In this document: piece after piece, positions 1-12,712 of the stretch
Layout: every line of letters begins with the position of its first letter
Numbering within the stretch: position 1 is the first letter of the stretch
Origin: Fonticula alba ATCC 38817
Taxonomy: Eukaryota; Protista; Nucleariida
Direction: 5' to 3' (one strand)
NCBI GenBank assembly: GCA_000388065.2
Contig: KB932213.1
DNA: 12,712 nt
Position numbers and translations under genes: made by a program
Notes under the pieces: model-generated
Seen by the model: the letters and a program-made list of their open reading frames with translations, nothing else
Databases searched by the model: none
What the model was told of the DNA's origin: nothing

Positions 1-3000
1 CCCCCCCCAGACGGCACCTGTGCTCCCTGCCACAGCAACTGCCGTGAATGCACCGGCCCGAATTTTCATCACTGCACCGCCTGCCGACCGGGCTACTCCA
101 TTTTGTATGGCAATTGCGTGGTATACGATCTCCCTCAGCCGAACATTTGGCCGGGGCCCGGGTACGGCATACCGATTTTCTACTACCAAGCCTCGGAGAT
201 GGCCACTTTCGACGGTCTCAGCCAGGTGACCCTGGCCAGCTTCTCCTCGACCTTCGACAAGCCCTTCCTCCTCAATGACCTGCGAGCCTTTCAGCACCTT
301 CGCCGGGTGGACTTCTCCCCGGCCACTGGCCACCACATCGAGGGGCTCTTCATCCGAAATGACCAGCATCGCTTCGTCCGGGCCCTGCCGGTCCCCGGGT
401 CCGGACACTTCACCCTGCAGGCGGCCTCGGCCAGCTACGCCATGGAATTCGTCTTCCGCCGGCTGGACCAGTCGCTGGCCCTGTCCGTGGACAACATGAG
501 TGCGCAACTGCCCATGGGCAGCCACCAAGCCGGCACCCCCTCCGGCACCGGTCTCAACTTCGACCTCTTTCTGAAATACTACTACATGCAGTCGTCTGTG
601 GGCTTCGCCCGCCCGACCTTCGATGGCATGCTCGCCCTGCCGGCTGCCTTGTCCTCCAATCAGCCGCTGGTCCCGGCCAACATGTACCTGGCCTTCGGGG
701 TCTGGCATCCGGTGGACAATCGCCGGGGCCAGGACCGCTGGCTGGTGGCCGCCAAGAGCACCTTCGACAGCCTCACCTGCTCGTACCACTGGACTGGCAT
801 CGTGCCCGGCGGCCTCGAGTTCAGCTACCTCCTGCCGGACTTCCTGCCGGTGGACCTGCCGCCCGGGCTGACCATGCCCTGCGCCCAGCCGCACTCCCTG
901 CCGCAGGACCCGGCCGGCGTGCACCCGCCGCCGATGCTCCTCTCGGTNNNNNNNNNNNNNNNNNNNNNNNNNNNNNNNNNNNNNNNNNNNNNNNNNNNNN
1001 NNNNNNNNNNNNNNNNNNNNNNNNNNNNNNNNNNNNNNNNNNNNNNNNNNNNNNNNNNNNNNNNNNNNNNNNNNNNNNNNNNNNNNNNNNNNNNNNNNNN
1101 NNNNNNNNNNNNNNNNNNNNNNNNNNNNNNNNNNNNNNNNNNNNNNNNNNNNNNNNNNNNNNNNNNNNNNNNNNNNNNNNNNNNNNNNNNNNNNNNNNNN
1201 NNNNNNNNNNNNNNNNNNNNNNNNNNNNNNNNNNNNNNNNNNNNNNNNNNNNNNNNNNNNNNNNNNNNNNNNNNNNNNNNNNNNNNNNNNNNNNNNNNNN
1301 NNNNNNNNNNNNNNNNNNNNNNNNNNNNNNNNNNNNNNNNNNNNNNNNNNNNNNNNNNNNNNNNNNNNNNNNNNNNNNNNNNNNNNNNNNNNNNNNNNNN
1401 NNNNNNNNNNNNNNNNNNNNNNNNNNNNNNNNNNNNNNNNNNNNNNNNNNNNNNNNNNNNNNNNNNNNNNNNNNNNNNNNNNNNNNNNNNNNNNNNNNNN
1501 NNNNNNNNNNNNNNNNNNNNNNNNNNNNNNNNNNNNNNNNNNNNNNNNNNNNNNNNNNNNNNNNNNNNNNNNNNNNNNNNNNNNNNNNNNNNNNNNNNNN
1601 NNNNNNNNNNNNNNNNNNNNNNNNNNNNNNNNNNNNNNNNNNNNNNNNNNNNNNNNNNNNNNNNNNNNNNNNNNNNNNNNNNNNNNNNNNNNNNNNNNNN
1701 NNNNNNNNNNNNNNNNNNNNNNNNNNNNNNNNNNNNNNNNNNNNNNNNNNNNNNNNNNNNNNNNNNNNNNNNNNNNNNNNNNNNNNNNNNNNNNNNNNNN
1801 NNNNNNNNNNNNNNNNCCACCGACCAGTGCGTGTCCAGCTGCCCGGACGGCACCGGGCCCAACCTGGCGGCCGGCCGGTGCGACCCCTGCGGCAATGGGA
1901 CCTGCCTCCGGTGCGAGACGTCGGCCCCCGGTGCCCACTGCACGGCCTGCCCCCCGGGGGAGACCTACGAAAGGGACTCGCGCACGTGCAGCCCGTGCAG
2001 GGACCACTGCCTGGAATGCATGAGCCTAGACAGCGGCGCCTGCCTGGTGTGCGAGCCCGGCTACCACCTGCACCATGGCGACTGCCTGGCCGCCTGCCCG
2101 GATGGCTTGTATGCGCACAGCATCCCGGCCGGGTCGCAGCCCGGCGGCCGGCCGGCCACGACCACCTGCCAGCCCTGCCACCCGATGTGCGCCACGTGCA
2201 CCGGGCCCAAGGCCAGCCAGTGCACCAGGTGCTTCGATTACTCGGCCACCCTGACCCCCGGGGCCGAGCCGGCCTCCTGCGTCAACCCGGCCCTCGGGGC
2301 CGGCGCCTGCAGACCCCAGGCGCCGGGCTGCCAAATGTGCCACACCGTCTTTTCGTGGTATTGTCTGACCTGCCAGCCGGGCTTCCTCCTGACCTCAAAC
2401 TGGAAGTGCCTCCCGCCGGACCAGTGTCCGCCCGGGACCTTCGCCAACCCGGACGCCGGCACGTGCTCCGCCTGCTCCATGAACTGCTCTTCCTGCACGG
2501 CCGAGGCCCCGCACGTGTGCCTTGAGTGCGCTCCTACCGCCTCGGTCCACCTGGCTGGTGGGCTGTGCATCGCCAGCTGCCCGGAGGACGGGCACTTCCA
2601 ATGGTCCAATAATGGCAGCCCCATGTGCTCGGCCTGCTCCGAGGGGTGCAAGCTGTGCACGTCCGCCGACTGGTGCGACCTCTGCCAGGCCGGCTACATC
2701 CCGTACCAGGGGGCCTGCCTGCCGGAGGGCGCCTGCCCGGCCGGGACCTTCGCCAATGTCGGCACCTGCCGGGCATGTAGCGACGCATGCGCCACCTGCT
2801 TCGGCCCGGGGGCCGCCCACTGCACCGGCTGCCCGGCCGGCCGGGTCCTGTCCCTGGGCCAGTGCCTGGCCGCCTNNNNNNNNNNNNNNNNNNNNNNNNN
2901 NNNNNNNNNNNNNNNNNNNNNNNNNNNNNNNNNNNNNNNNNNNNNNNNNNNNNNNNNNNNNNNNNNNNNNNNNNNNNNNNNNNNNNNNNNNNNNNNNNNN

Positions 3001-4320
3001 NNNNNNNNNNNNNNNNNNNNNNNNNNNNNNNNNNNNNNNNNNNNNNNNNNNNNNNNNNNNNNNNNNNNNNNNNNNNNNNNNNNNNNNNNNNNNNNNNNNN
3101 NNNNNNNNNNNNNNNNNNNNNNNNNNNNNNNNNNNNNNNNNNNNNNNNNNNNNNNNNNNNNNNNNNNNNNNNNNNNNNNNNNNNNNNNNNNNNNNNNNNN
3201 NNNNNNNNNNNNNNNNNNNNNNNNNNNNNNNNNNNNNNNNNNNNNNNNNNNNNNNNNNNNNNNNNNNNNNNNNNNNNNNNNNNNNNNNNNNNNNNNNNNN
3301 NNNNNNNNNNNNNNNNNNNNNNNNNNNNNNNNNNNNNNNNNNNNNNNNNNNNNNNNNNNNNNNNNNNNNNNNNNNNNNNNNNNNNNNNNNGTCTGCGCCG
3401 GCTGCCACGAGACGTGCGCCGAGTGCGCGGGCCCGGCCGCGGCCCAGTGCACGGCCTGCTCGCCGGCCCGGCCGTTCCTCATCCCCGGCGCCGGCTGCCG
3501 GGCCACCTGCCCGAATGGCAGCTACCCCGAGGCCGGCGGGTCGTCTTGCGCGCCCTGCCACCCTGGCTGCGATGCCTGCACCGGGCCCGGTGAGGGCGAC
3601 TGCTCCACCCCGTTGCCGGGTGACGGCAGCAGCAGCGGCGGCAGCGGTGGCAGCGGCGGCAGCGGCGGTAGCGGCGGTAGCAGCGGTAGCAGCAGCGGCA
3701 GCAGCGGCAGCAGCGGTAGCGGCGATAGCAGCGGTAGCAGCAGCGGCAGCAGCGGCAGCAGCGGTAGCGGCGATAGCAGCAGCGGCAGCAGCGGCAGCAG
3801 TGGCAACAGCAGCAGTCACAGCAGTGGCAGCAGCGGCAGCAGTGGCAACAGCAGCAGCAGTCACAGCAGTGGCAACAGCGGCAGCAGTAGTGGCAACAGC
3901 AGCAGTCACAGCAGTGGCAGCAGCGGCAGCAGTGGCAACAGCAGCAGCAGTCACAGCAGTGGCAACAGCGGCAGCAGTGGCAGCAGTGGCAGCAACAGCG
4001 GCAGCAGCGGCAGCAGCGGCAGTCACAGCAATGGCAGCAGCGGCAGCAGCGGCAGCAGTGGCAGCAGTGGCAGTCACAGCAATGGCAGCAGCGGCAGCAG
4101 TGGCAACAGCGGCAGCAGCGGCAGCAGCGGCAGCAAGCCCTCCTCCGGCCGGAACAAGACCGCCCTGGCCATCGGCCTCGGGGTGGGCCTGTCCCTGTTG
4201 GTCATCATCGTCGTGGCCGCGGTGGCGGTGCTGTTCCTGCGGAAGGCCGCCTCCGGCCGCGGCGCTGACAAGCCCGCCATCGGCTTCGACTCCGTGGAGA
4301 TGGACATCATCGACGCCTGA
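1..4320 (+). CDS. 5'-partial type I membrane protein: furin-like (FU) Cys-rich repeats, globular domain shared with gene 2, Gly/Ser stalk, TM helix, short tail
   Basis: Frame 1 is open from base 1 (PPPDGTCAPCHSNCRECTGPNFHHCTACRPG), so the track's start at 103 (TTG) is internal. At least 10 C-x(3-6)-C-x2-C repeats are visible (e.g. CHPMCATCTGP, CSDACATCFGP, CHETCAECAGP). Strong G/C third positions. TGA at 4318-4320. Interrupted by two N-runs with the same frame on both sides. Bases 1-10 (C8AG) could instead be an intron 3' end. Confidence 0.88.
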   Translation, partial: PPPDGTCAPCHSNCRECTGPNFHHCTACRPGYSILYGNCVVYDLPQPNIWPGPGYGIPIFYYQASEMATFDGLSQVTLASFSSTFDKPFLLNDLRAFQHLRRVDFSPATGHHIEGLFIRNDQHRFVRALPVPGSGHFTLQAASASYAMEFVFRRLDQSLALSVDNMSAQLPMGSHQAGTPSGTGLNFDLFLKYYYMQSSVGFARPTFDGMLALPAALSSNQPLVPANMYLAFGVWHPVDNRRGQDRWLVAAKSTFDSLTCSYHWTGIVPGGLEFSYLLPDFLPVDLPPGLTMPCAQPHSLPQDPAGVHPPPMLLSXXXXXXXXXXXXXXXXXXXXXXXXXXXXXXXXXXXXXXXXXXXXXXXXXXXXXXXXXXXXXXXXXXXXXXXXXXXXXXXXXXXXXXXXXXXXXXXXXXXXXXXXXXXXXXXXXXXXXXXXXXXXXXXXXXXXXXXXXXXXXXXXXXXXXXXXXXXXXXXXXXXXXXXXXXXXXXXXXXXXXXXXXXXXXXXXXXXXXXXXXXXXXXXXXXXXXXXXXXXXXXXXXXXXXXXXXXXXXXXXXXXXXXXXXXXXXXXXXXXXXXXXXXXXXXXXXXXXXXXXXXXXXXXXXXXTDQCVSSCPDGTGPNLAAGRCDPCGNGTCLRCETSAPGAHCTACPPGETYERDSRTCSPCRDHCLECMSLDSGACLVCEPGYHLHHGDCLAACPDGLYAHSIPAGSQPGGRPATTTCQPCHPMCATCTGPKASQCTRCFDYSATLTPGAEPASCVNPALGAGACRPQAPGCQMCHTVFSWYCLTCQPGFLLTSNWKCLPPDQCPPGTFANPDAGTCSACSMNCSSCTAEAPHVCLECAPTASVHLAGGLCIASCPEDGHFQWSNNGSPMCSACSEGCKLCTSADWCDLCQAGYIPYQGACLPEGACPAGTFANVGTCRACSDACATCFGPGAAHCTGCPAGRVLSLGQCLAAXXXXXXXXXXXXXXXXXXXXXXXXXXXXXXXXXXXXXXXXXXXXXXXXXXXXXXXXXXXXXXXXXXXXXXXXXXXXXXXXXXXXXXXXXXXXXXXXXXXXXXXXXXXXXXXXXXXXXXXXXXXXXXXXXXXXXXXXXXXXXXXXXXXXXXXXXXXXXXXXXXXXXXXXXXXXVCAGCHETCAECAGPAAAQCTACSPARPFLIPGAGCRATCPNGSYPEAGGSSCAPCHPGCDACTGPGEGDCSTPLPGDGSSSGGSGGSGGSGGSGGSSGSSSGSSGSSGSGDSSGSSSGSSGSSGSGDSSSGSSGSSGNSSSHSSGSSGSSGNSSSSHSSGNSGSSSGNSSSHSSGSSGSSGNSSSSHSSGNSGSSGSSGSNSGSSGSSGSHSNGSSGSSGSSGSSGSHSNGSSGSSGNSGSSGSSGSKPSSGRNKTALAIGLGVGLSLLVIIVVAAVAVLFLRKAASGRGADKPAIGFDSVEMDIIDA
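49..947 (+). repeat. Paralogous segment, copy 1 (FU repeat end plus globular domain), homologous to 9275-10179
   Basis: Manual alignment: shared NDLRAF.HLRR.DFSPA, PVPGSGHFTLQ, VFRRL, FARPT, WHPVDNRRGQDRWL, KSTFDS, CSYHWT, MPCAQPHSLPQDPAGVHPPPMLLS. Offset is 9226 up to base 324, then 9232. Confidence 0.97.
948..1816. other. N-run (869 nt), assembly gap or mask inside gene 1
   Basis: Ns in the sequence. Confidence 1.
2876..3390. other. N-run (515 nt) inside the FU repeat array of gene 1
   Basis: Ns in the sequence. Confidence 1.
3625..4134 (+). repeat. Coding AGC/GGC-type triplet repeat, 170-codon Gly/Ser stalk with nested tandem duplications
   Basis: Only AGC, AGT, GGC, GGT, AAC, AAT, GAT and CAC codons are used. 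Perfect 48-nt duplication (3679-3726 = 3727-3774) and perfect 90-nt duplication (3799-3888 = 3889-3978). Confidence 0.97.
4162..4239 (+). other. Transmembrane helix of gene 1 (ALAIGLGVGLSLLVIIVVAAVAVLFL)
   Basis: 26 uncharged, mostly hydrophobic residues followed by RK (positive-inside rule), then a 26-aa tail to the stop. Confidence 0.92.
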
Positions 4321-4965
4321 TTCCCCCCGGGAGATAGCCCCGGCGCATGTGTACATGTGGAGCCATGGTGGCACACGGTGGGGAAAAAAAAACCGGTGTG
4401 CCGCCGCGCAAGGACACCAGACTCAGGACTCCTTGCGCGGGGGCGCATCGCGTGAAATACACTCCACCCATCAGAGCGCCGCATCCCTCGCGTAGGTGGT
4501 TGAACTTGGCCGGTTTTTCTCTCTGATCATGGGACGGTGGGGCGAGCGGGGGGGGGGGGGAAGGGGGGACTCTCCGATGCACACCACTTCCCAAGGGAGC
4601 ACGCACACCATTCACCTCTCCCGGCCGACGGGGGGAAGAGGGCAGCGGCTGGGACAGGGCCTCCCCTAAGGCGAAGGTTGGCACCCTGTCCGCCCCCCCC
4701 CCTCCCCTCCCAGACCCAGGAAGCCAGCTCCGAGCCCTGCTCCCGCGGACCCGCCCCCCGGATCGATGGTCCTAGCGCGCACGCGTGCCCGCGCAGCCGG
4801 GCATATGGGGCCCGTGCGCCAGGTCCAACGCCGGTCCGGCTTGCATCCGGCCGGGCGAGCCGCCTCCATCAGATCGCCCCCCGGCGCCGGGGCCACCGCC
4901 GGGCAAGGGCCTATGCGGGGATGCACCGAGGATGGGGCCCGACAGGCCCCCGTATGAGGCCCCCG

Positions 4966-4988
4966 CCCCCCCCCCCCCCCCCCCCCCC
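4966..4988 (+). repeat. C23 homopolymer, the longest of many G/C runs in the spacer
   Basis: Direct count. Others: G13 4548-4560, C10 4693-4702, C11 5494-5504, G10 6529-6538, G9 6655-6663, G11 6974-6984, C14 7145-7158. Confidence 0.95.
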
Positions 4989-5057
4989 AGAATCAGGCTC
5001 CCTCGCAAGGCCACCACACCCCGGGTCAAATCCACCGCACGAAGATACACACTTCCA

Positions 5058-5065
5058 TATAAAAA
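5058..5065 (+). promoter_or_regulatory. TATA-like element (TATAAAAA) with no obvious downstream gene
   Basis: Matches TATAWAWR in a very GC-rich background. Function unsupported. Confidence 0.3.
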
Positions 5066-5068
5066 TGT

Positions 5069-5098
5069 ACACACACACACACACGCGCGCGCGCGCGC
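5069..5098 (+). repeat. Compound dinucleotide microsatellite (AC)8(GC)7
   Basis: Direct reading. Confidence 0.95.
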
Positions 5099-6212
5099 TC
5101 GCAGACACGTTCAAACTCGCGCGGACGTACGGCATCGGCCCTGACACACCCCGTGGCTGTGCTCGGCCCGGGCCAACGCGAGCAAGGCCCGCTGGCGACC
5201 TCGGCAGACTCGCTGGGCCGGAACGCTTGTCAGCCGCAAACCGCGCGCATGCCGGCTGCCCGTGATACGGTCGGGCATCTCGAACTCGGACTCCCGCCCG
5301 GAGGCCTGCCGGGCAAGCTGACTGCCGAGTGGCCCCCAATCCCGGACGAGGCCGAGAGGCGGACGCAGGTGCAGGGCGACAGCTGCCGAGGGCGGCAGAT
5401 GAAGCGATGCGCACGCGCGAGGTTCCCGCACGCCCGTCCCTTGACCGGGCGCCCAAAGCCAAAAGCGGGCCCAAGGGTACTTGTCGCTCGCCGCCCCCCC
5501 CCCCTCCCAGCCTTCTCGACGACCAGAGCCGCAGCCAATGGCACCTAGGTACCCGGGGGGGCGTCCAGGTGGTATATGGCACACGCACGATGAGCGCTGG
5601 TCTCAGCCTCCCGGCCGGTCACCGCGGTGAGGCGCGCATGCCCGGCTGCTGTCGCCGCGGTCGAGGCCCCTTGGCCGGGGCTGGCGAATCCCGGGGCCCG
5701 GCTGGCGTCTCGGCCAGCAGCCCGACGCCCCCGGCGGCCAAGGACCACCAACACAGGAGGGCGGCCTGGCGAAGGGCAGGCGGCCGGGCCACACGGCTCC
5801 CCGGGTGGGAGAACAACAAGCAGAGACCGCCCCTCAAGAGACCACTGGCCCCGATCATGGGAGGGGGGGGCTGGAGCCACGACGCTGGGACCTTGGGGCC
5901 CGTCTGCCTTGCTCCCCTGTGAGGACGGTAGAAGCACGGCAGCCCCTTGTGGGGTGACCGCGCGAGGGACCGCAAATCCATTGGGCTCGAGGGCCACAGC
6001 AGGGGAGGCGGAGGGGCGCCGTGCCGAGGCGGGTCAGCGACTCAAGTCGCGGGCGCCTGGCATAAAGGGAAGGGCCATCCGCCAAGACAGCAACCGAGCG
6101 CGACGAGCCAAGGCAAGTCCCGGAGGAGGGACGGCCGGGGGCGCGGCCCTGGCGGGGCCTCGCGGCCCAACGCGGTGCCTACAAAAGCCCGTCGCGCCTC
6201 CCCGGATGACAT

Positions 6213-6285
6213 GCCTGTTTAGCTCAGTTGGTAGAGCATGGGACTCTTAATCCCAGGGTCGTGGGTTCGAGCCCCACAGTGGGCT
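6213..6285 (+). tRNA. trnK: tRNA-Lys, anticodon CTT, intronless, no encoded CCA
   Basis: Full cloverleaf: acceptor GCCTGTT/AGTGGGC, D stem GCTC/GAGC, anticodon stem TGGGA/TCCCA with loop CTCTTAA (CTT at 6246-6248), T arm GTGGG-TTCGAGC-CCCAC. Internal A and B boxes intact. Confidence 0.97.
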
Positions 6286-6289
6286 TCTC

Positions 6290-6303
6290 TTTTGGCGGTT
6301 TTT
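6290..6303 (+). terminator. Pol III oligo-T terminators (T4 6290-6293, T5 6299-6303)
   Basis: T-runs immediately 3' of the tRNA. Confidence 0.75.
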
Positions 6304-6580
6304 GGCCGCGCAGCAAAAACTGAAATGCCCCTGGGGCCGCCCCCCATTTTGATCGTGGGCCAGGGGGCTGGGCCGAGCGCGCGGGCGCCGTGGCACGTGC
6401 GCGCCCGCTCCCTGGCGCCCGAGTCACGGGCCATGCCGCTGTCTATCACGCGGTGCACCGGCCATGAACACCGCCCCCGCGGTCCTGCGCCATTCCCATC
6501 GCCTCGCCCCCCCCACACAGGCCGAGAAGGGGGGGGGGTGCTGGGCCTCCGGGAGCCGCCCCCCGTGGCACCAGAGCTGC

Positions 6581-6604
6581 GCCCGCCCGCCCGCCCGCCC
6601 GCCC
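6581..6604 (+). repeat. (GCCC)6 tetranucleotide repeat
   Basis: Direct reading. Confidence 0.9.
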
Positions 6605-7668
6605 TCCCAGCCGCCCGCCCGAATGGCCCCTCTGTCGGGCGGCATTTGTGTGGTGGGGGGGGGAGCCTCTCCAATCGACACGCTTCATGACCCCCGGGGC
6701 CTTGCCGCTGCCGCCCCGGTGGCATGGGGTTGACTCGCGCGGGGACCCCCGGCGCCCGGGACCCACTACAATGGTCGCCAACCCCCTCCCCAGCCCGCCC
6801 GAAGGAGGGACACGCCCCAGCCACATGTCCCTCTCCTCCCCCGATCGCCCACGCCCGGCGCGCAGCACGAGCCCGGCGACCAGGCTCCAATGAACTTGGA
6901 TTATATTAAATCTCGTTTTTCGTGTGGGGTTCCCATCCCCTGCCCCACGCGTGCTGGCCATTCATCTGACCGCGGGGGGGGGGGCCCCGCGCGAAGGCCC
7001 GGTGTTGGCGTTCGCCCCCCCACGAACCGCGATGCCCCCGGCCCGGCCCCCGTATTTAAAGCGTGTCTCCCCTTTCGACAGAGGGGGGAGAGGGTACGCG
7101 GGCCGCCTTCTTCGCGCCATCCATGCTGTCCAGGGGTGATGGAACCCCCCCCCCCCCCATCAAAGTTCAGGGGCTTTCCCATGCCCGGTCCCCACACTCC
7201 GGTCGCACTTCCGGGCCACACGCCCGGGTCCCTTGGGCCGGGTGGTCTGCCCGCCGCGGCCCACGGCACAGACGTCCGCCCCGCGCGTGTCTCGGTGTGT
7301 GGCGGCGGCGGCATGGGCCCGCGGACACAAGAGGAGGTGGGCCCGCCCGGGGTGGGCGGATTTCGGCCGACGATCCTGGCGGGCTCCTCGGCACACGACG
7401 CGCGTTCCCGGCCGGTGGCGGGCCCCCGAACAGCGGGCAAGCAGCACCTCGATCCGAGGAGGTTTCCCCCCGGGTGTCTGTCCTTCTGGCTCGCGCGCCC
7501 CGTCTGCGCCCATCGGGCCGGCCCTGCACGCGTGCCGCCTTCCCCTGCCCCCGCCCCCGCTCCTGTCCCCGGCCATGCTTCTCCCTCCTCCTCTCTCCCG
7601 CCCTCCCCATGGAGACAAGCTCGCATGGTCAGGCCAGTGCTGGCGCTGCCGATGTTGCCGATGTTGCG

Positions 7669-7692
7669 GCAGCAGCAGCAGCAGCAGCAGCA
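7669..7692 (+). repeat. (GCA)8 trinucleotide microsatellite, probably non-coding
   Basis: Direct reading. Confidence 0.9.
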
Positions 7693-7854
7693 ACAGCTGA
7701 CGCTGGCGCCGTACTCCCGAAGGCTGGCCGTGCTTCGCACAAGGATAGGCCGCTCTGATGGCCCAACGCCACCGGGGCCAGGGCTGCGAGCAAGCCACAC
7801 AGCCCACTTGGGCCTTTCCCCCTCGGCCCCCCACGTCGGACTCCCCTGCTGCCA

Positions 7855-7862
7855 TATATAAA
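7855..7862 (+). promoter_or_regulatory. Candidate TATA box of gene 2 (TATATAAA)
   Basis: Perfect TATAWAWR match about 210 nt upstream of ATG 8069, in a GC-rich region where AT islands are rare. Confidence 0.55.
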
Positions 7863-7939
7863 AAGACATGCCTGAATGTGCGGCCGTCATCCATATGCCC
7901 TCCATCATCCCCTGCCTATCGCCCCTCTTCCTCAAGCAA

Positions 7940-7940
<1 letters not shown>

Positions 7941-8035
<95 letters not shown>

Positions 8036-8052
8036 CACACGCACGCACGCAC
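7941..8052 (+). repeat. (GCAC)n tetranucleotide microsatellite, 28 units (24 perfect, one ACAC, 3 more)
   Basis: Direct count. It explains the THAR/RACV runs in the ORF track. Confidence 0.98.
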
Positions 8053-8068
8053 GCGCCTGCAACGCACC

Positions 8069-8200
8069 ATGACCGGTCCCCGGCCACCGGCCCCGGGCAG
8101 GAGCCGGCCGCACGCGACCCCCAGCGGCGGCAGCCTCACGCCCCTGGCCTGGCTGCTGGCCGGCCTGGCCCTGCTGGCCGCCGCGGCCACCACGCGCGCC
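8069..8200 (+). other. Predicted signal peptide (long n-region, hydrophobic core, cleavage near TTRA/A)
   Basis: Hydrophobic stretch PLAWLLAGLALLAAAA followed by small residues. Judged by eye, not by a predictor. Confidence 0.7.
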
Positions 8201-10802
8201 GCCCTGCTGCCCACCCCGGCCAGCCTGGAATACCACCTGCTGCGCATCTTCCCCGAAGTCCTCTACCAGGACGTCTCCCTCCGGCGGAACATCCACTTCT
8301 GCGACTTCTTCAACCAGGACACCCTGTCGCCCGGGGCGCCGGACGGCCTGGACGACTTGATCTTCTACGACTCGCACTACGCCTTCGAGACGTCCCCCGA
8401 ACACCGGGCCTCCAGGGATGCCCCCACCCCGGGCGCCCGGTACCCGGTGCACCTTGCCCACGCCGGCGTTCAAACCTTCCACTGCATCACGAAGGTGCCC
8501 TTCCCCCTGGCCCCGTTGACCTACCTCAACACGCGCTACAGCCCGGCCCTTGGCCGCATCCAGGAGATCTTCTACGCCGGCAGCCACAAAACCCTGCACC
8601 AGTCCAACGGGCTGTTCTCCGCGAAGCAAGGCCTGGGCGGCCTCACCCTGCCGGTCCTGATCACCGCCTATCCCATGGGCCCGGACCAGCCCTTCTCCGG
8701 CTTGATGGCCCTCTATTACTCGTATATGGCCTTGATGAATATCAACCTCCTGGACAGCTACAATAGCTACACGGAATACGAAAAGCTCGAAATCGAGGAC
8801 CTACACTCGATCACTGGCGCCGCCTCCGTGGACCTGGACAATGACGGCCTGCCGGAGGCCCTGATCGCCAGCAAGCACCAGGACCTGCCGGAGGACGTCT
8901 ATGTCTTGACGCACCTGAGCCGCTTCCTGGACCCGACCCTGCCGGATCAGGCGCACTGCCTGCAGCGGAGCCTTCTCCAGCTGCCGGCCGGCTTCCTCCC
9001 GGGCAGCATCATCCTCGGCGACTTCGATGGGGATGGCCATGCCTCGGACATTGCCCTCGTCTCGGACCACGGGTCCACCNNNNNNNNNNNNNNNNNNNNN
9101 NNNNNNNNNNNNNNNNNNNNNNNNNNNNNNNNNNNNNNNNNNNNNNNNNNNNNNNNNNNNNNNNNNNNNNNNNNNNNNNNNNNNNNNNNNNNNNNNNNNN
9201 NNNNNNNNNNNNNNNNNNNNNNNNNNNNNNNNNNNNNNNNNNNNNNNNNNNNNNNNNNNNNNNNNNNNNNNNNNTGCACCGGCCCGGCGGCCGACCAGTG
9301 CACCGCCTGCCCGACCGGCCAGCACCTGCTCAATGGCACCTGCGGCACGACTCCGGCGGCCACGGTGACCGTCCGGCCGGAGCCCGGCCCCGGCACGCCG
9401 GCCGTCTACTTCCAGGCCTCCAACTTGGGGAACTTCGGCCCGATGAAACGGCTGGCCGTGGCCAGCCTCTCCTCGGCCACCAACCAGCCCTTCCTCTTCA
9501 ATGACCTGCGAGCCTTTGAGCACCTTCGCCGGGCGGACTTCTCCCCGGCCGGCACCGGTGCCCGTCGCGCCGAGGGCCTTTTAGCCGTGGACACGGAGAA
9601 GCACGTCATGCAGGCCGTGCCGGTCCCCGGGTCCGGGCACTTCACCCTGCAGATGTCGCTGGCGCCGGAAATGCTGGACCTGGTGTTCCGCCGGCTGGCC
9701 GAGTCGCTGCACATGCCCCTGTTTGATGACGAGCTGCTGGAGTGCCTCGGCGACCGGGACAATGCCATCACCTCCGGCACCGGGCGCCTGTGCGACCTGG
9801 CGCTGCGTACCACCCTGAGCCGCAACGCATTGGAATTCGCCCGCCCGACCCCGGACCGGGTCCTGGCCCAGCAGCAGATAATCCTCGGCTCTAGCGGGAT
9901 CTCCCCGGACTCCATGCAAGATGCCTTCGGGGCCTGGCACCCGGTGGACAATCGCCGGGGCCAGGACCGCTGGCTGTCGGTCTCCAAGAGCACCTTCGAC
10001 AGTGTATCCTGCTCGTACCACTGGACCAACCTGCTGACGGTATATATCCAGCCTATCCTGAAGCGCCAGGACTTCCGGCCGGTGGATCTGCCGCCCGGGC
10101 TGATCATGCCCTGCGCCCAGCCGCACTCCCTGCCGCAGGACCCGGCCGGCGTGCACCCGCCGCCGATGCTCCTCTCGGTCGCCGCCCCGGGGCCCAGCAG
10201 TCCGGCCCTGCTCTACCTGTGGCGGTCCACCTCCACGGTCGATGGCCATGCCCGGATGGATGCCCCGGTGCCGCTGCTCCGCGCCGCGGATCTCGGCTAC
10301 CCGCAGGGCACCAGCCCGACCACCTTCCAGCTGGTCATCATGCCGCACACCCTGCGCCACGACCGGGCCGAGCTCTTCTTCTGGGACGGCCAGTGGTTCT
10401 ACTCGGCCGTGCTGACCCTGGCCCCGGACGGCGCGGCCCACCTGTCCGTGCAGCCGGCCGTCCCACAGAGCATGCAGATGCTGTTGCACTTCCAGCAGGC
10501 CAACCCGACCGCCGTGCGCCTCGTCCCGCTGGACGTCGATGGCGATGGCCGGCCCGAGGTGGCGGCCGTCCGCCTGGACACCGGCGGCGTCACCCTCTTC
10601 GCCGAGGCCGGCCCGCACAATGGCTGCGGCGCCGGGGCCCTCGGCACTTGTGTCGAGCCCCGCCCGGCCTGGGCCCCGGGCAACTGCGCCCCCTCCGAGC
10701 CCTGCACCTGGAAGCCCACCAGCCTGCAGGTCGGTGACCTGGCTGCCTGCACCGACGGTGTGGCCGTGCCCGGCGGGCTGCCGTGCGTGCCGTGCGGCTT
10801 CG
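8069..10802 (+). CDS. Gene 2, 3'-incomplete here: surface or secreted protein with signal peptide, FG-GAP-type Ca-binding motifs, FU repeat, globular domain shared with gene 1, Cys-rich segment
   Basis: ATG 8069 in good Kozak context (GCACCATG), then MTGP...LAWLLAGLALLAAAATTRA. Motifs DGLDDLIF (8342), DLDNDGLPE (8831), DFDGDGHASD (9020), DVDGDGRPE (10532). FU repeat CTGPAADQCTACPTG after the 195-nt gap. No stop before the gap at 10803. Confidence 0.85.
9080..9274. other. N-run (195 nt) in gene 2
   Basis: Ns in the sequence. Confidence 1.
9275..10179 (+). repeat. Paralogous segment, copy 2 (homologous to 49-947)
   Basis: See copy 1. 260-324 vs 9486-9550 has 3 mismatches in 65 nt, and 838-947 vs 10070-10179 has 3 mismatches in 110 nt. 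Confidence 0.97.
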
Positions 10803-11789: not shown

Positions 11790-12712
11790 CCCATCTCGCC
11801 GGTGCACCTGGCCGGGCTGCAGCGCGACGCCGGGCCCCACCGGCCGGCGCCGCACCCCGGCGCGGACGTCGGCGCCGCCACCCAGCTGGGCATGGTGGCC
11901 AGCGCGGCGGCCACCCTGGCGCAGATCAACTCCAACCTGGCCCGCGTGATGCCACACATGGCCGGCGTTGTGGTGGCCCCGGCCGACCTGGCCACCCCCC
12001 TGCCGGTGAAGGCCGCCCTCACCGTGACCCTCTATGCCAATGGCCTCCACGAGGAGTCGCCCAGGCTCTCCAGGCACCCGGTGGCGATGTATGACGTGCC
12101 GCTGCCGTACCCGGCCCAGGAGCTGGCCTTCACCCCGGGCCCGGTCCACGGCCAGTACCACTCGGCGGTGCACTCCCTCCGGCGGACCACCACCGGCGAG
12201 CATTTGGTCATCCTGCCCTTCTGGACGACCGCGCACTGGAGCGCCCATGAAGAAACCCAATTCATCATGCTGACCCTGCCCAGCGTGACGCCGCGCCTGA
12301 GCGCGCCGCACCGGGCCCATCGCCCCGGCGAGGCCGCGGCCCTGGCCCTGCCGGCGGCCACGGCCCTGTACCCGGCGCTGGCCGGCACCCCCGGCGACCG
12401 GCCGGCCGTCTTCTTCTTCACCAACAAGTGGCAGAGGCCGGAATTCCTCTTCCTCCAGCCCCCGGGCGATGATGTGCCCCTGCACCAGGCCCTCTACTAC
12501 CAGCAGTCCTTCGACACCGAGCAGATGGTGGCCCTGGTCCGGGCCGATGGCCAGCCGGCCGGCATCGTCATGCAGCCATACGGCTGCCTGGGGTACCAGT
12601 CGCTCAGGGATTTCGACATCGCCGCCGGCAGGAAGACCTTCGTGGCGCCGGCCGGCCTCACGGCCCCGGCCTTCATGGCGGACAACCACTCCGGCCGCCA
12701 GGACTCCGGCTG
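11790..12712 (+). CDS. Partial CDS of 307 codons, open at both ends, absent from the ORF track. Probably the continuation of gene 2, otherwise a third gene. Unknown domain.
   Basis: The frame starting at 11790 reads PISPVHLAGLQRDAG...LTVTLYANGLHEESP...HLVILPFWTTAHW...PAVFFFTNKWQRPEFLFL...DNHSGRQDSG with no stop and the same G/C third-position bias as the other coding parts. The minus-strand ORF ending at 12689 is its in-register shadow. Confidence 0.85.

What the first reader, a model, noticed from the sequence alone, without database searches (positions are those of the whole stretch)
49..10179. Framework plus length-locked hypervariable blocks between two tandem surface-protein paralogs
Seen: over ~300 codons (49-947 vs 9275-10179) there is only one 6-nt indel, yet identity is bimodal. 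Near-identical DNA blocks include synonymous sites (260-324: 62/65 nt; 381-420: 38/40; identical 36-nt run 709-744; identical 75-nt run 873-947). They alternate with divergent blocks of exactly equal length: 421-690 has 26/90 identical aa, and 796-837 GIVPGGLEFSYLLP vs NLLTVYIQPILKRQ has 0/14 aa and 15/42 nt. Neutral divergence would spread changes, especially synonymous ones, more evenly. Inference: framework segments are homogenised by gene conversion or recombination while binding segments diversify. This would be a variable-receptor family for kin, prey or predator recognition, analogous in logic to Dictyostelium TgrB1/TgrC1 or Giardia VSPs.
Basis: partly seen in the sequence, partly recalled or inferred. 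Interest (0 to 1): 0.85.

Follow-up and report, generated by a model that had tools for sequence, protein, structure and literature searches.

The report
Mosaic surface-receptor gene family in Fonticula
Neighbouring genes of the aggregating amoeba Fonticula alba encode giant surface proteins whose outer propeller-like domain is a patchwork of near-identical and unrelated stretches, best explained by the copies swapping short pieces; this pattern is well known in surface-protein families, but this family is undescribed and its role is untested.

Summary
The window is Fonticula alba scaffold KB932213.1. The two copies belong to a family with at least four assembled copies of this domain, and unmatched read ends hint at more. 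The proteins are giant type I membrane proteins: FG-GAP/VCBS-like propeller head, furin/VSP-like Cys stalk, Ser/Gly spacer, one TM. Detectable homologues exist only in F. alba, including receptor Ser/Thr kinases.

Four-copy comparison shows a true mosaic: the most divergent copy switches from block to block (chi-square p=7e-24). Copies g2 and g3 are 100% identical over long stretches, then drop to 40-60% in short blocks where g3 matches g1 or L1. Fourfold sites differ 3/109 in framework against 9/37 in variable context; saturation is 50%. Codon bias, compensated frameshifts and assembly chimeras were tested and do not explain it.

Short-tract exchange between paralogues is therefore supported. 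Positive selection is not shown (omega 1.1 in variable blocks). No RNA run listed holds copy 1 or the copy-2 domain contig. The recognition function is untested.

Scaffolding is unreliable. Gap 948-1816 is really about 3.26 kb, bridged in frame by KK198012.1. Gap 9080-9274 is probably underestimated. This is a new member of a known kind.

The parts
1..10 (+). Probable 3' end of an intron (C-run followed by AG) before the exon that starts the compared domain in gene 1. The contig begins here, directly after a scaffold gap.
   Evidence: Copy g3 has the same C-run plus AG. The annotated model of paralogue H696_06319 splices at the equivalent point. Window base 1 is L002 2377, which follows gap 793-2376.
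11..947 (+). Gene 1 (copy g1): an EGF-like Cys motif, then the first ~300 codons of the propeller-like variable domain.
   Evidence: Open frame 0. Single unbranched k=31 contigs from two runs cover 7-727 and 1-738 with 0 mismatches.
260..324 (+). Framework block (PFL.NDLRAF.HLRR.DFSPA), 62/65 nt identical to 9486-9550.
   Evidence: Summed read depth is 1.6x (X1) to 7x (X3) that of flanking unique sequence.
381..420 (+). Framework block (PVPGSGHFTLQ), 38/40 nt identical to 9613-9652.
421..690 (+). Long variable region of copy g1: 26/90 aa and 136/270 nt identical to 9653-9922.
   Evidence: In the blocks tested inside it, gapped nt alignment scores are at or near the shuffled level.
709..744 (+). 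Framework block (WHPVDNRRGQDRW), an identical 36-nt run shared by all four copies. It has the highest summed depth.
   Evidence: Depth is 8x (X1) to 12x (X3) of unique flanks.
796..837 (+). Variable block of g1 (GIVPGGLEFSYLLP): 0/14 aa against g2, but related to the g3 and L1 versions.
   Evidence: A contig covering 733-902 with 0 mismatches links it to both flanking framework blocks.
873..947 (+). Framework block (MPCAQPHSLPQDPAGVHPPPMLLS), an identical 75-nt run. The contig ends here.
   Evidence: It is near-identical in all four copies and in L003.
948..1816 (.). Assembly gap. The real content is about 3257 nt of gene 1, supplied by unplaced scaffold KK198012.1 (H696_06303).
   Evidence: Exact overlaps of 95 nt and 50 nt; the joined sequence has no stop in frame 0.
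1817..2875 (+). Gene 1 stalk of furin-like / VSP-like Cys-rich repeats.
   Evidence: Pfam VSP 41.6 bits (cut-off 31.4) and Furin-like_2 38.8 bits (cut-off 28).
3391..4320 (+). Gene 1 3' end: last Cys repeats, a Ser/Gly-rich spacer (about 3625-4137), a TM helix (about 4162-4239), a short tail, and the stop codon at 4318-4320.
   Evidence: Sequence read directly. Frame 0 is open to the stop.
6213..6285 (+). tRNA-Lys(CTT) in the spacer between the two genes.
   Evidence: ARAGORN.
8069..9079 (+). Gene 2 (H696_05695) 5' part: signal peptide and FG-GAP-like blades. It lies on the same contig as the gene 1 3' end, so the tandem arrangement holds at contig level.
   Evidence: Contig 3391-9079 is unbroken.
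9080..9274 (.). Assembly gap, probably underestimated. Reads continue from 9079 into sequence identical to KB932266.1 positions 75 onward.
   Evidence: Loose ends in X1 and X3 match L001 position 75 exactly. L001 has about 760 nt between the equivalent points.
9275..10179 (+).
   Evidence: Read-level contigs reproduce each local junction, for example 9947-10134 with 0 mismatches.
10028..10069 (+). g2-specific replaced block (NLLTVYIQPILKRQ) with codons that are AT-rich for this genome. g1, g3 and L1 share a different block type here.
   Evidence: g2 is the outlier at 15 singleton sites in cols 251-275, against 2 for g1.
10180..10802 (+). Rest of the propeller-like domain, with a DVDGDG FG-GAP loop, then an EGF-like Cys knot. 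This part is much more evenly conserved between copies.
   Evidence: g1 (via L003) against g2: 78% aa identity, fourfold differences 8/111. Weak Pfam FG-GAP hits.

Best explanation
The window is part of a tandem array in Fonticula alba (scaffold KB932213.1). It encodes a lineage-restricted family of giant single-pass surface proteins. Each has a signal peptide, FG-GAP/VCBS-type propeller-like head domains with EGF-like knots, a long furin/VSP-like Cys-rich stalk, a Ser/Gly-rich spacer, one TM helix and a short tail.

The compared ~300-400-codon domain is most likely a very divergent FG-GAP/VCBS beta-propeller. Its copies (g1, g2, g3 and the copy on KB932266.1, with hints of more) exchange short tracts of roughly 30-90 nt by interparalogue gene conversion or unequal recombination. 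As a result, each copy is a different patchwork of block types.

Framework blocks are near-identical even at silent sites. Variable blocks are as different as unrelated sequence, and particular block types recur in different combinations among copies.

Shown: the mosaic, the silent-site heterogeneity, the switching relationships, the presence of each junction in the reads, and the restriction of the domain to F. alba, including its receptor kinases.

Inferred: the exchange mechanism, the propeller fold, and that the domain binds an external ligand. The last rests on its position at the membrane-distal end and its reuse in receptor kinases. Whether the variation is selected for recognition is not shown.
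For: Organism and family:
- The only homologues among 1.84 billion representatives are F. alba proteins. They include H696_03801 and three proteins that the sources name as Ser/Thr kinases.
- Further copies: g3 at L002 25696-26880, L001, and L003, which is the continuation of g1.

Mosaic:
- The outlier copy switches g1 -> g2 -> g3 -> g1 along the alignment, with contingency chi-square 148, p=7e-24.
- The longest runs of agreeing polymorphic sites beat every one of 5000 permutations for g2-g3, g2-L1 and g3-L1. For g1-L1, p=0.006.
- In the 10-codon map, g2-g3 is 100% identical in cols 17-66 and 167-186 but 40-63% in 117-126, 217-236 and 267-276. In those blocks g3 matches L1 (97%) or g1 (87-100%).

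Silent sites:
- Fourfold sites at identical residues differ 3/109 in conserved context against 9/37 in variable context (Fisher p=2.3e-4).
- The family's own saturation level is 50%, taken from the distant paralogue H696_03801. Codon bias alone therefore cannot give 97% identity.
- The codon-model tree is 14 times longer in the variable partition than in the conserved one, with omega about 1.1. Silent divergence must therefore also be much higher there.
- GC3 is 0.84 in variable blocks and 0.94 in framework blocks (p=2e-5). This is compatible with GC-biased conversion of the framework.

Reads:
- Unbranched k=31 contigs cover window 1-738 with 0 mismatches in two runs.
- Loose ends at block borders match g2, g3 and L1 exactly.

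Fold:
- The AF2 model is all-beta with pTM 0.64.
- Foldseek top hits are propellers, mostly named VCBS or FG-GAP.
- The nearest language-model clusters are FG-GAP proteins.
Against: - The PHI test on the 43 parsimony-informative sites is not significant (p=0.62).
- Part of the outlier switching could be copy-specific block replacement from unsampled donors, or local hypermutation, rather than exchange among the four copies seen.
- Long-range linkage across identical runs of 36 nt or more is verified at k=31 for g1 only. g2, g3 and L1 are covered by short contigs.
- All read data from organism A come from the sample or samples behind the assembly. Scaffolding at this locus is demonstrably wrong in gap sizes.
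- Some 'copies' could be alleles or haplotypes rather than paralogues. L001 against g3 is the main candidate.
- The fold assignment rests on a low-confidence model (pLDDT 55, TM 0.26-0.36) and on Pfam hits below the cut-offs.
- No RNA run listed holds the g1 stretch or the copy-2 domain contig, so some copies may be silent or pseudogenes, although all frames are open.
Confidence: 0.7

Rival explanations
1. Ordinary divergence of old paralogues without exchange. Structural core strands of the propeller are held by purifying selection, loops are free to drift, and strong codon bias (GC3 0.91) makes conserved residues look identical at the DNA level too.
For: GC3 is 0.906, so chance codon identity at identical residues is already 51-58%. 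Omega grades from 0.28 in framework to 1.10 in variable blocks, as expected for core against loops. The PHI test is not significant.
Against: - Codon identity in framework context is 94% (fourfold-site identity 97%), against 51% (50% at fourfold sites) at saturation in the same family.
- Fourfold divergence differs about 8-fold between contexts (p=2e-4).
- No single tree fits. g3 is g2-like, L1-like or g1-like by block, and outlier switching gives p=7e-24.
- g2 and g3 are 100% identical over 150 nt, then drop to 40% within 30 nt.
Confidence: 0.1
2. Assembly artefact. Contigs of a collapsed multi-copy family are chimeras that switch between copies inside shared runs, or identical blocks were created by consensus across copies.
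For: The locus is shattered into contigs of 0.9-5.7 kb that end exactly in shared blocks. Gap sizes are wrong by kilobases. Small unplaced scaffolds belong in the gaps. Only short-read k=31 contigs were available for checking.
Against: - Window 1-738 is one unbranched contig with 0 mismatches in two separate runs.
- Contigs 733-902 and 9947-10134 tie the most divergent blocks to both flanks.
- Loose ends at block borders reproduce the g2, g3 and L1 junctions exactly.
- Shared runs inside the contigs are 75 nt or shorter.
- Runs from a different 2025 study (organism B) hold the framework blocks, and in one sample a g1-type variable stretch (83-239), at 97-99% identity.
Confidence: 0.07
3. Targeted local hypermutation, or strong diversifying selection by point substitution, in fixed segments of recently duplicated genes, with no donor sequences involved.
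For: Variable blocks keep their length almost exactly. Their divergence is at the random level, while silent sites a few codons away are nearly identical. g2's block 10028-10069 has codons atypical for the genome and no relative among the held copies.
Against: - Block types recur in other copies. g3's blocks match L1 or g1 at 87-100%, which points to transfer rather than fresh mutation.
- Omega in variable blocks is about 1.1, not far above 1.
- A g1-type variable stretch (83-239) is 97.5% conserved in an organism B sample. That is no more diverged than the framework, which argues against ongoing hypermutation.
Confidence: 0.08
4. Some of the compared copies are divergent alleles or haplotypes of one locus in a non-haploid or mixed culture. 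The mosaic would then reflect allelic recombination at a hyperpolymorphic locus, not paralogue conversion.
For: L001 shares exact 73-96-nt ends with two places of the main scaffold, and a 96.8% identical 5' region with g3. It could not be placed in the scaffold.
Against: - A 3' gene end and the next 5' gene start lie on one contig, 3391-9079. Three domain copies are scaffolded in series.
- Unique parts of g1 and g2 have similar depth: 162 against 171-235 in X3.
- This reading would change only the label of the exchange partners, not the mosaic itself.
Confidence: 0.05

Closest known systems
Podospora anserina HNWD family (het-d, het-e, het-r; NLRs with highly internally conserved WD40 repeats)
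   Same: A beta-propeller recognition domain in a multigene family of a holomycotan. The framework is kept near-identical by exchange within and between loci, and variation is concentrated at a few places (PMC1805685, PMC2873952). This is the closest parallel in logic.
   Different: Those are cytoplasmic NACHT-WD40 proteins. Whole 42-residue repeat units are shuffled, and four positions per repeat are shown to be under positive selection on the interaction face. Here the proteins are extracellular single-pass membrane proteins with an FG-GAP-like propeller. The exchanged units are irregular 10-30-codon blocks, and positive selection is not shown.
Dictyostelium tgrB1/tgrC1 and the tgr family
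   Same: Surface proteins of an aggregative amoeba, encoded in a locus that duplicates and recombines repeatedly (PMC12745789).
   Different: Tgr proteins are built of IPT/TIG Ig-like domains, and none was found here. Their hallmark is extreme polymorphism between strains and matching ligand-receptor pairs. Neither could be tested here.
Giardia VSPs and high-cysteine membrane proteins
   Same: A CXXC-rich furin-like ectodomain repeat. Pfam VSP scores 41.6 bits in 1819-2874, above the cut-off. They are type I membrane proteins in a multigene family.
   Different: The match covers only the stalk, not the mosaic domain. The tail does not end in the VSP-type CRGKA motif; gene 1 ends ...VEMDIIDA. 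There is no evidence of one-at-a-time expression.
Integrin alpha / bacterial VCBS FG-GAP beta-propellers
   Same: DxDxDG loops occur at 9020-9040 and around 10530. Weak FG-GAP Pfam hits were found. Foldseek and language-model neighbours are FG-GAP/VCBS propellers.
   Different: Most blades have lost the motif, and Pfam scores are below the cut-offs. There is no integrin thigh, calf or beta partner. The propeller is followed by a furin-repeat stalk in the same chain.
Segmental gene conversion in antigen families (trypanosome VSG mosaics, Plasmodium var, Borrelia vlsE, Neisseria pilE/pilS)
   Same: Multi-copy surface-protein genes whose variable segments are re-assorted between copies while flanking framework stays identical (my own knowledge of these systems).
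   Different: Those are parasites or pathogens evading immunity, with silent donor archives and one expression site. No silent cassettes were found in the 48 kb held, and no expression data exist here.

Membership tests
FG-GAP / VCBS beta-propeller (integrin-alpha type) | Pfam FG-GAP (PF01839) or FG-GAP_3 (PF13517) match above the curated cut-off | tested here: not met
   The domain piece 9275-10801 scores 15.2 and 13.1 bits, against cut-offs of 26.9 and 22.1. The N-terminal piece 8069-9079 scores 26.3 against 26.9. This is just below threshold and covers single blades only.
FG-GAP / VCBS beta-propeller (integrin-alpha type) | Seven-bladed all-beta propeller fold | tested here: inconclusive
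   The AF2 model is all-beta with pTM 0.64 but mean pLDDT 55. Foldseek top hits are propellers, many named VCBS or FG-GAP, with probability 1.0 but TM only 0.24-0.36. The profile finds no PDB sequence. Atlas neighbours are FG-GAP clusters at score 0.91, which is a lead only.
FG-GAP / VCBS beta-propeller (integrin-alpha type) | Ca-binding DxDxDG loops in blades | tested here: met
   GDFDGDGHASD lies at about 9020-9052 and LDVDGDGRPE at about 10526-10555. Both were read directly.
Giardia variant-specific surface protein (PF03302) | CXXC-rich ectodomain matching the VSP profile above the cut-off | tested here: met
   41.6 bits against a cut-off of 31.4 in window 1819-2874. This is the stalk only. 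The mosaic domain piece scores 18.9, below the cut-off.
Giardia variant-specific surface protein (PF03302) | Conserved short cytoplasmic tail ending CRGKA (from my knowledge of VSPs) | tested here: not met
   The gene 1 tail after the TM helix reads RKAASGRGADKPAIGFDSVEMDIIDA, then stop. It is not a VSP.
Furin-like cysteine-rich repeat (PF15913) | Pfam match above the cut-off | tested here: met
   38.8 bits against a cut-off of 28 in 1819-2874.
Dictyostelium Tgr family | IPT/TIG immunoglobulin-like ectodomains | tested here: not met
   No IPT/TIG family appears among the Pfam hits of any of the six pieces at E<=0.1.
Dictyostelium Tgr family | Extreme between-strain polymorphism with matching ligand-receptor pairs | not testable with these tools
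   Only k=31 contigs of one other source (organism B) were available. They show 1-3% divergence on framework and on one g1-type variable stretch. This is far too little to measure polymorphism.
Mosaic (segmentally converting) surface-protein gene families | Several copies in the genome, at least partly clustered | tested here: met
   g1, g2 and g3 lie on KB932213.1, and a further copy on KB932266.1. Loose read ends match none of the held loci. Summed depth on framework blocks is 1.6-12x that of unique flanks.
Mosaic (segmentally converting) surface-protein gene families | Block-wise incongruent relationships between copies | tested here: met
   chi-square p=7e-24, and run tests p<0.0002 for three pairs. 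The PHI test alone is not significant.
Mosaic (segmentally converting) surface-protein gene families | Silent donor cassettes and exclusive expression of one copy | tested here: inconclusive
   No extra copies of the variable blocks occur in the 48 kb of loci held. No RNA run listed holds the g1 stretch. The rest of the genome could not be searched by DNA.

The most novel reading that the evidence does not exclude
The family is a Fonticula-specific repertoire of recognition receptors. Their membrane-distal propeller is diversified by cassette-like exchange between tandem copies, and it serves self/kin discrimination during aggregation, or discrimination of bacterial prey. That would be an independently evolved allorecognition-type system in the sister lineage of fungi. 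It would use an integrin-like propeller that is also wired to receptor kinases in the same genome.
Probability: 0.15. Interest if true: 0.8.

Novelty: new member of a known kind. Interest (0 to 1): 0.45.

Why it matters
Fonticula alba is the only known aggregative multicellular organism on the fungal side of the opisthokonts. Nothing is known about how its cells recognise each other or their prey. This is a lineage-restricted, rapidly evolving, recombining family of giant surface proteins, and its variable domain also sits on receptor kinases. That makes it a concrete candidate set for such recognition, with exact blocks to follow between strains.

The finding is also a practical warning. This locus is badly scaffolded in the reference assembly: gaps are wrong by kilobases, unplaced scaffolds belong inside genes, and annotated 'introns' jump across gaps. 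The gene models H696_05694, H696_05695, H696_06303 and H696_06319 are fragments of larger genes.

Tried and rejected
- Codon bias alone. Rejected: identical residues shared with the distant paralogue H696_03801 have only 51% identical codons and 50% fourfold differences, against 94% codon identity (97% at fourfold sites) in framework context.
- Compensated frameshifts as the source of equal-length blocks with 0% aa identity. Rejected: shifting by 1 or 2 nt does not raise identity, and in most g1-g2 blocks gapped scores equal the shuffled level; they are modestly above it in cols 210-236 and 267-284.
- Silent donor cassettes nearby. None were found in the 48 kb held.
- Positive selection. NG86 gives omega 0.9-1.6, but this is inflated by GC3 0.9. 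The ML codon model gives 0.53 overall and 1.10 in blocks picked for variability. Not demonstrated.
- PHI test. Not significant with 43 informative sites.
- Mapping variable blocks on a face. The model is too poor and no coordinates were available. Variable columns are only non-significantly depleted in predicted strands (p=0.15), and low pLDDT simply follows variability.
- Sequence search of solved structures. No hit at E<=10.
- Expression. No RNA run listed holds the g1 stretch or the copy-2 domain contig.
- Literature. No paper joins Fonticula with FG-GAP, and none describes this family.
- Copy number from depth. The runs disagree (X1 1-8x, X3 7-12x) and the tool warns that summed depth is not copy number, so I give only a range.
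- The third protein-database search and the second structure job were not used. They could not change the verdict.

Full report
WHAT THE WINDOW IS

The window is 63-74% G+C and holds four runs of N. Its best protein match is 'hypothetical protein H696_06319 [Fonticula alba]'. Gene 2 is H696_05695 on scaffold KB932213.1 of GCA_000388065.2, and window base 1 equals base 2377 of locus L002.

Reading on the + strand, the window holds the following.
- Gene 1 in three pieces, all open in frame 0: 1-947, 1817-2875 and 3391-4320. It ends in a Ser/Gly-rich spacer, one TM helix, a short tail and a stop at 4318-4320.
- A 3.7-kb spacer containing tRNA-Lys(CTT) at 6213-6285.
- Gene 2, starting at ATG 8069 with a signal peptide. 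It continues in 9275-10802 (same frame by N count) and 11790-12710 (another frame).

Pfam sees FG-GAP-like blades (below cut-off) in the heads. It sees furin-like and VSP-like Cys repeats (above cut-off) in the stalk.

A protein-guided codon alignment of 49-947 with 9275-10179 has 299 aligned codons and one 2-codon indel. It shows 150 identical residues, 131 identical codons among them, and 67% nt identity.

Shuffling codon columns 5000 times never gives an identical run longer than 44 nt, against 73-75 observed. It never gives half the observed variance of windowed identity.

THE GAPS, TESTED FIRST AS ASKED

The 947-nt contig is flanked by gaps on both sides.

Gap 948-1816. Unplaced scaffold KK198012.1 (L003, 3402 nt, H696_06303) overlaps window 853-947 by 95 nt and window 1817-1866 by 50 nt, both exactly. 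Joined through these overlaps, 5263 nt read in frame 0 without a single stop. This includes an annotated in-frame 201-nt intron. The gap therefore hides about 3257 nt of gene 1, not 869.

Gap 9080-9274. Contigs made from the reads of two runs pass 9079 and continue into letters that match KB932266.1 (L001) position 75 onward exactly. L001 has about 760 nt, with an intron-like frame change, between this point and its CTGP motif. The same L001 end also matches a second place of the main scaffold over 96 nt. The gap is therefore probably underestimated. The annotated splice across it (…DHGST|CTGP… in P0002) is an artefact. Whether 8069-9079 and 9275-10802 belong to one gene rests on scaffolding only.

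Gap 2876-3390 could not be bridged.

None of this touches the comparison itself, which lies inside two contigs. The tandem arrangement is secure at contig level, because the gene 1 3' end and the next 5' end share contig 3391-9079.

MORE COPIES

The domain also occurs at L002 25696-26880 (g3, 80% aa identity to g2) and on L001 (L1, 70%). g1 can be extended through L003.

A profile search of 1.84 billion representative proteins finds only F. alba proteins: these copies, H696_03801 (2959 aa, complete), and three proteins that the sources name as Ser/Thr kinases. One further hit, the repetitive P0005, I judged spurious. The domain is therefore lineage-restricted at the level HMMER can see, and it is reused on receptor kinases.

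Contig ends of g1, g3, L1 and L3 coincide with shared blocks, which is what a short-read assembler does in a repeat family.

IS THE IDENTITY AT SILENT SITES MEANINGFUL?

GC3 is 0.906, so some codon identity is free. I calibrated this with the distant paralogue H696_03801 (27-28% aa identity). At 288 identical, degenerate residues only 51% of codons are the same, and 99/198 fourfold sites differ.

Against that, g1-g2 fourfold sites at identical residues differ as follows.
- 3/109 where local aa identity is 0.8 or higher.
- 7/60 at intermediate identity.
- 9/37 where local aa identity is below 0.5 (Fisher p=2.3e-4).

The same gradient appears in five of the six pairs. It is strongest for g2-g3, where synonymous codon differences at identical residues are 1% against 25%.

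In long divergent runs all three codon positions are close to chance: 24/36/46% observed against 26/27/36% expected. In most g1-g2 variable blocks gapped nt alignments score no better than shuffled sequence.

A codon model gives a tree 14 times longer in the variable partition than in the conserved one, with omega 1.10 against 0.28. Silent divergence must therefore also be several-fold higher there.

THE COPIES ARE MOSAICS OF EACH OTHER

In the four-copy alignment, the copy carrying the private differences changes along the sequence.
- Cols 1-225: g1 has 152 private differences and g2 has 16.
- Cols 251-275: g2 has 15 and g1 has 2.
- Cols 276-300: g3 has 8.
- Cols 376-400: g1 has 15.

The contingency chi-square is 148 (p=7e-24).

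In 10-codon bins, g2 and g3 are 100% identical in cols 17-66 and 167-186. They fall to 60%, 40-63% and 47% in cols 117-126, 217-236 and 267-276. In those blocks g3 matches L1 at 97%, or g1 at 87-100%. In cols 287-296 g3 is the odd one.

Sawyer-type tests measure the longest run of agreeing polymorphic sites. They exceed all 5000 permutations for g2-g3, g2-L1 and g3-L1, and give p=0.006 for g1-L1. The PHI statistic on only 43 informative sites is not significant.

The simplest reading is repeated short-tract transfer between copies, some of them not sampled. For g2, g3 and L1 this looks like divergent cassettes pasted onto very young duplicates. For g1 against the rest it could equally be framework homogenisation. 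GC3 is higher in framework (0.94) than in variable blocks (0.84, p=2e-5). This fits GC-biased conversion, but also weaker codon selection in loops.

ARE THE CONTIGS REAL?

Only Logan k=31 contigs of the 2012 runs were available, not raw reads.

Two runs each give one unbranched contig with no mismatch over window 7-727 and 1-738. A 170-nt contig then covers 733-902 across the 0/14 block. For g2, a 188-nt contig covers 9947-10134.

Loose ends at the borders 420/431/432 and 689/691 are exact matches to g2, g3 and L1. The reads therefore contain each framework-to-variable junction of each assembled copy. Several other loose ends match none of the loci held, so more copies probably exist.

Summed depth over framework blocks is 1.6-8x (X1) and 7-12x (X3) that of the unique flanks. 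The tool warns this is not a copy number.

Runs from a separate 2025 study (organism B) hold framework blocks at 97-99%. In one sample they also hold the g1-type stretch 83-239 at 97.5%. This speaks against ongoing hypermutation of that stretch.

I rate a chimeric-assembly origin of the pattern at under 10%. Linkage across shared runs in g2, g3 and L1 is still unverified.

WHAT THE DOMAIN IS

An AF2 model of 9275-10801, built with a nine-row family alignment, is all-beta with pTM 0.64 but mean pLDDT 55. Confidence is lowest in the variable blocks.
- Foldseek returns only propellers from the PDB.
- From AlphaFold DB clusters it returns mainly proteins named VCBS or FG-GAP. Probability is 1.0, but TM is only 0.24-0.36.
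- Language-model neighbours are FG-GAP clusters at 0.91, which is a lead only.
- The profile finds no solved structure by sequence.

I take it as a very divergent FG-GAP/VCBS-type propeller. I could not map the blocks to a face. Hypervariable columns are only non-significantly depleted in predicted strands.

FUNCTION

The architecture is a membrane-distal propeller on a long Cys-rich stalk, and the same domain is reused on receptor kinases. This points to binding of something outside the cell. Nothing tested here says what.

Omega of about 1.1 in the variable blocks does not demonstrate diversifying selection. NG86 values of 0.9-1.6 are inflated by codon bias. No RNA run listed holds the g1 stretch or the copy-2 domain contig. 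No paper in the library describes the family.

COMPARISON WITH KNOWN SYSTEMS

The logic is that of concerted evolution plus localised variation in recognition families. It is closest to the Podospora HNWD WD40 propellers (PMC1805685, PMC2873952), and more loosely to the recombining tgrB/C locus of Dictyostelium (PMC12745789) and to mosaic antigen families.

Membership in Tgr fails because there is no IPT/TIG domain. Membership in Giardia VSPs fails because only the stalk matches and the tail is different. I therefore file it as a new member of a known kind of evolutionary behaviour, in an undescribed, Fonticula-restricted receptor family.

EARLIER NOTES OF THIS SCAN

Other first-stage notes on this genome already pointed to head-to-tail FG-GAP/furin-stalk genes just upstream, and to FG-GAP/furin receptor kinases elsewhere. 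My searches agree with both.

Noticed in passing
window 948-1816 with L003 (KK198012.1) 1-3402: The unplaced 3.4-kb scaffold KK198012.1 (annotated as a separate partial gene, H696_06303) fits exactly into this gap, with 95-nt and 50-nt perfect overlaps. It makes gene 1 one open frame of at least 5263 nt. The gap length in the assembly (869) is wrong by about 2.4 kb.
   Followed up: yes
window 9007-9079; L001 (KB932266.1) 1-96; L002 21250-21345: The start of unplaced scaffold KB932266.1 is identical to the contig end before gap 9080. Over 96 nt it is also identical to the contig end before a 10-N gap further down the same scaffold. Its far end is 96.8% identical to the 5' region of the third tandem gene. 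The scaffold is either a fourth unit of the array or a haplotype.
   Followed up: partly
window 7626-8072: The annotated gene 2 model starts at ATG 7626 (MVRPVLALPML…Q-run) and splices over the (GCAC)n tract at about 7941-8054. ATG 8069, directly after the tract, gives a normal signal peptide. Which start is used is open.
   Followed up: no
window 3621-4140: There are about 170 codons of almost pure Ser/Gly/Asn/His, with imperfect tandem units (SSGSSGN…SSHSSG), between the Cys stalk and the TM helix. This looks like a mucin-like spacer likely to vary in length.
   Followed up: no
window 10028-10069: The g2-only block uses codons that are rare in this genome (GTA TAT ATC … CCT ATC). In the bin 9978-10048, two of three runs of the same sample show no contig, and only X1 covers it. 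The origin of this block is unexplained.
   Followed up: partly
window 8840-10802 and 83-946, runs X5 and X6: Five runs of a 2025 study labelled with another organism name hold 26-30% of the words of the gene 2 domain. They also hold contigs 1-3% diverged from the window. This could be a second strain or a close relative of F. alba in public data, usable for a strain comparison.
   Followed up: partly
window 4321-8068: The intergenic spacer is rich in long G or C homopolymer runs (for example 4545-4560, 4965-4988, 7147-7160) and in dinucleotide tracts (CA/CG at 5071-5098). These probably contribute to the assembly breaks in this region.
   Followed up: no
L002 1-27935 (KB932213.1:70543-98477): Ten gaps lie in 28 kb. 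Gene models across them (1154 aa, 1199 aa, 368 aa) treat the gaps as introns. By comparison with the gap-free paralogue H696_03801 (2959 aa), each model is a fragment of a roughly 3000-aa protein.
   Followed up: partly
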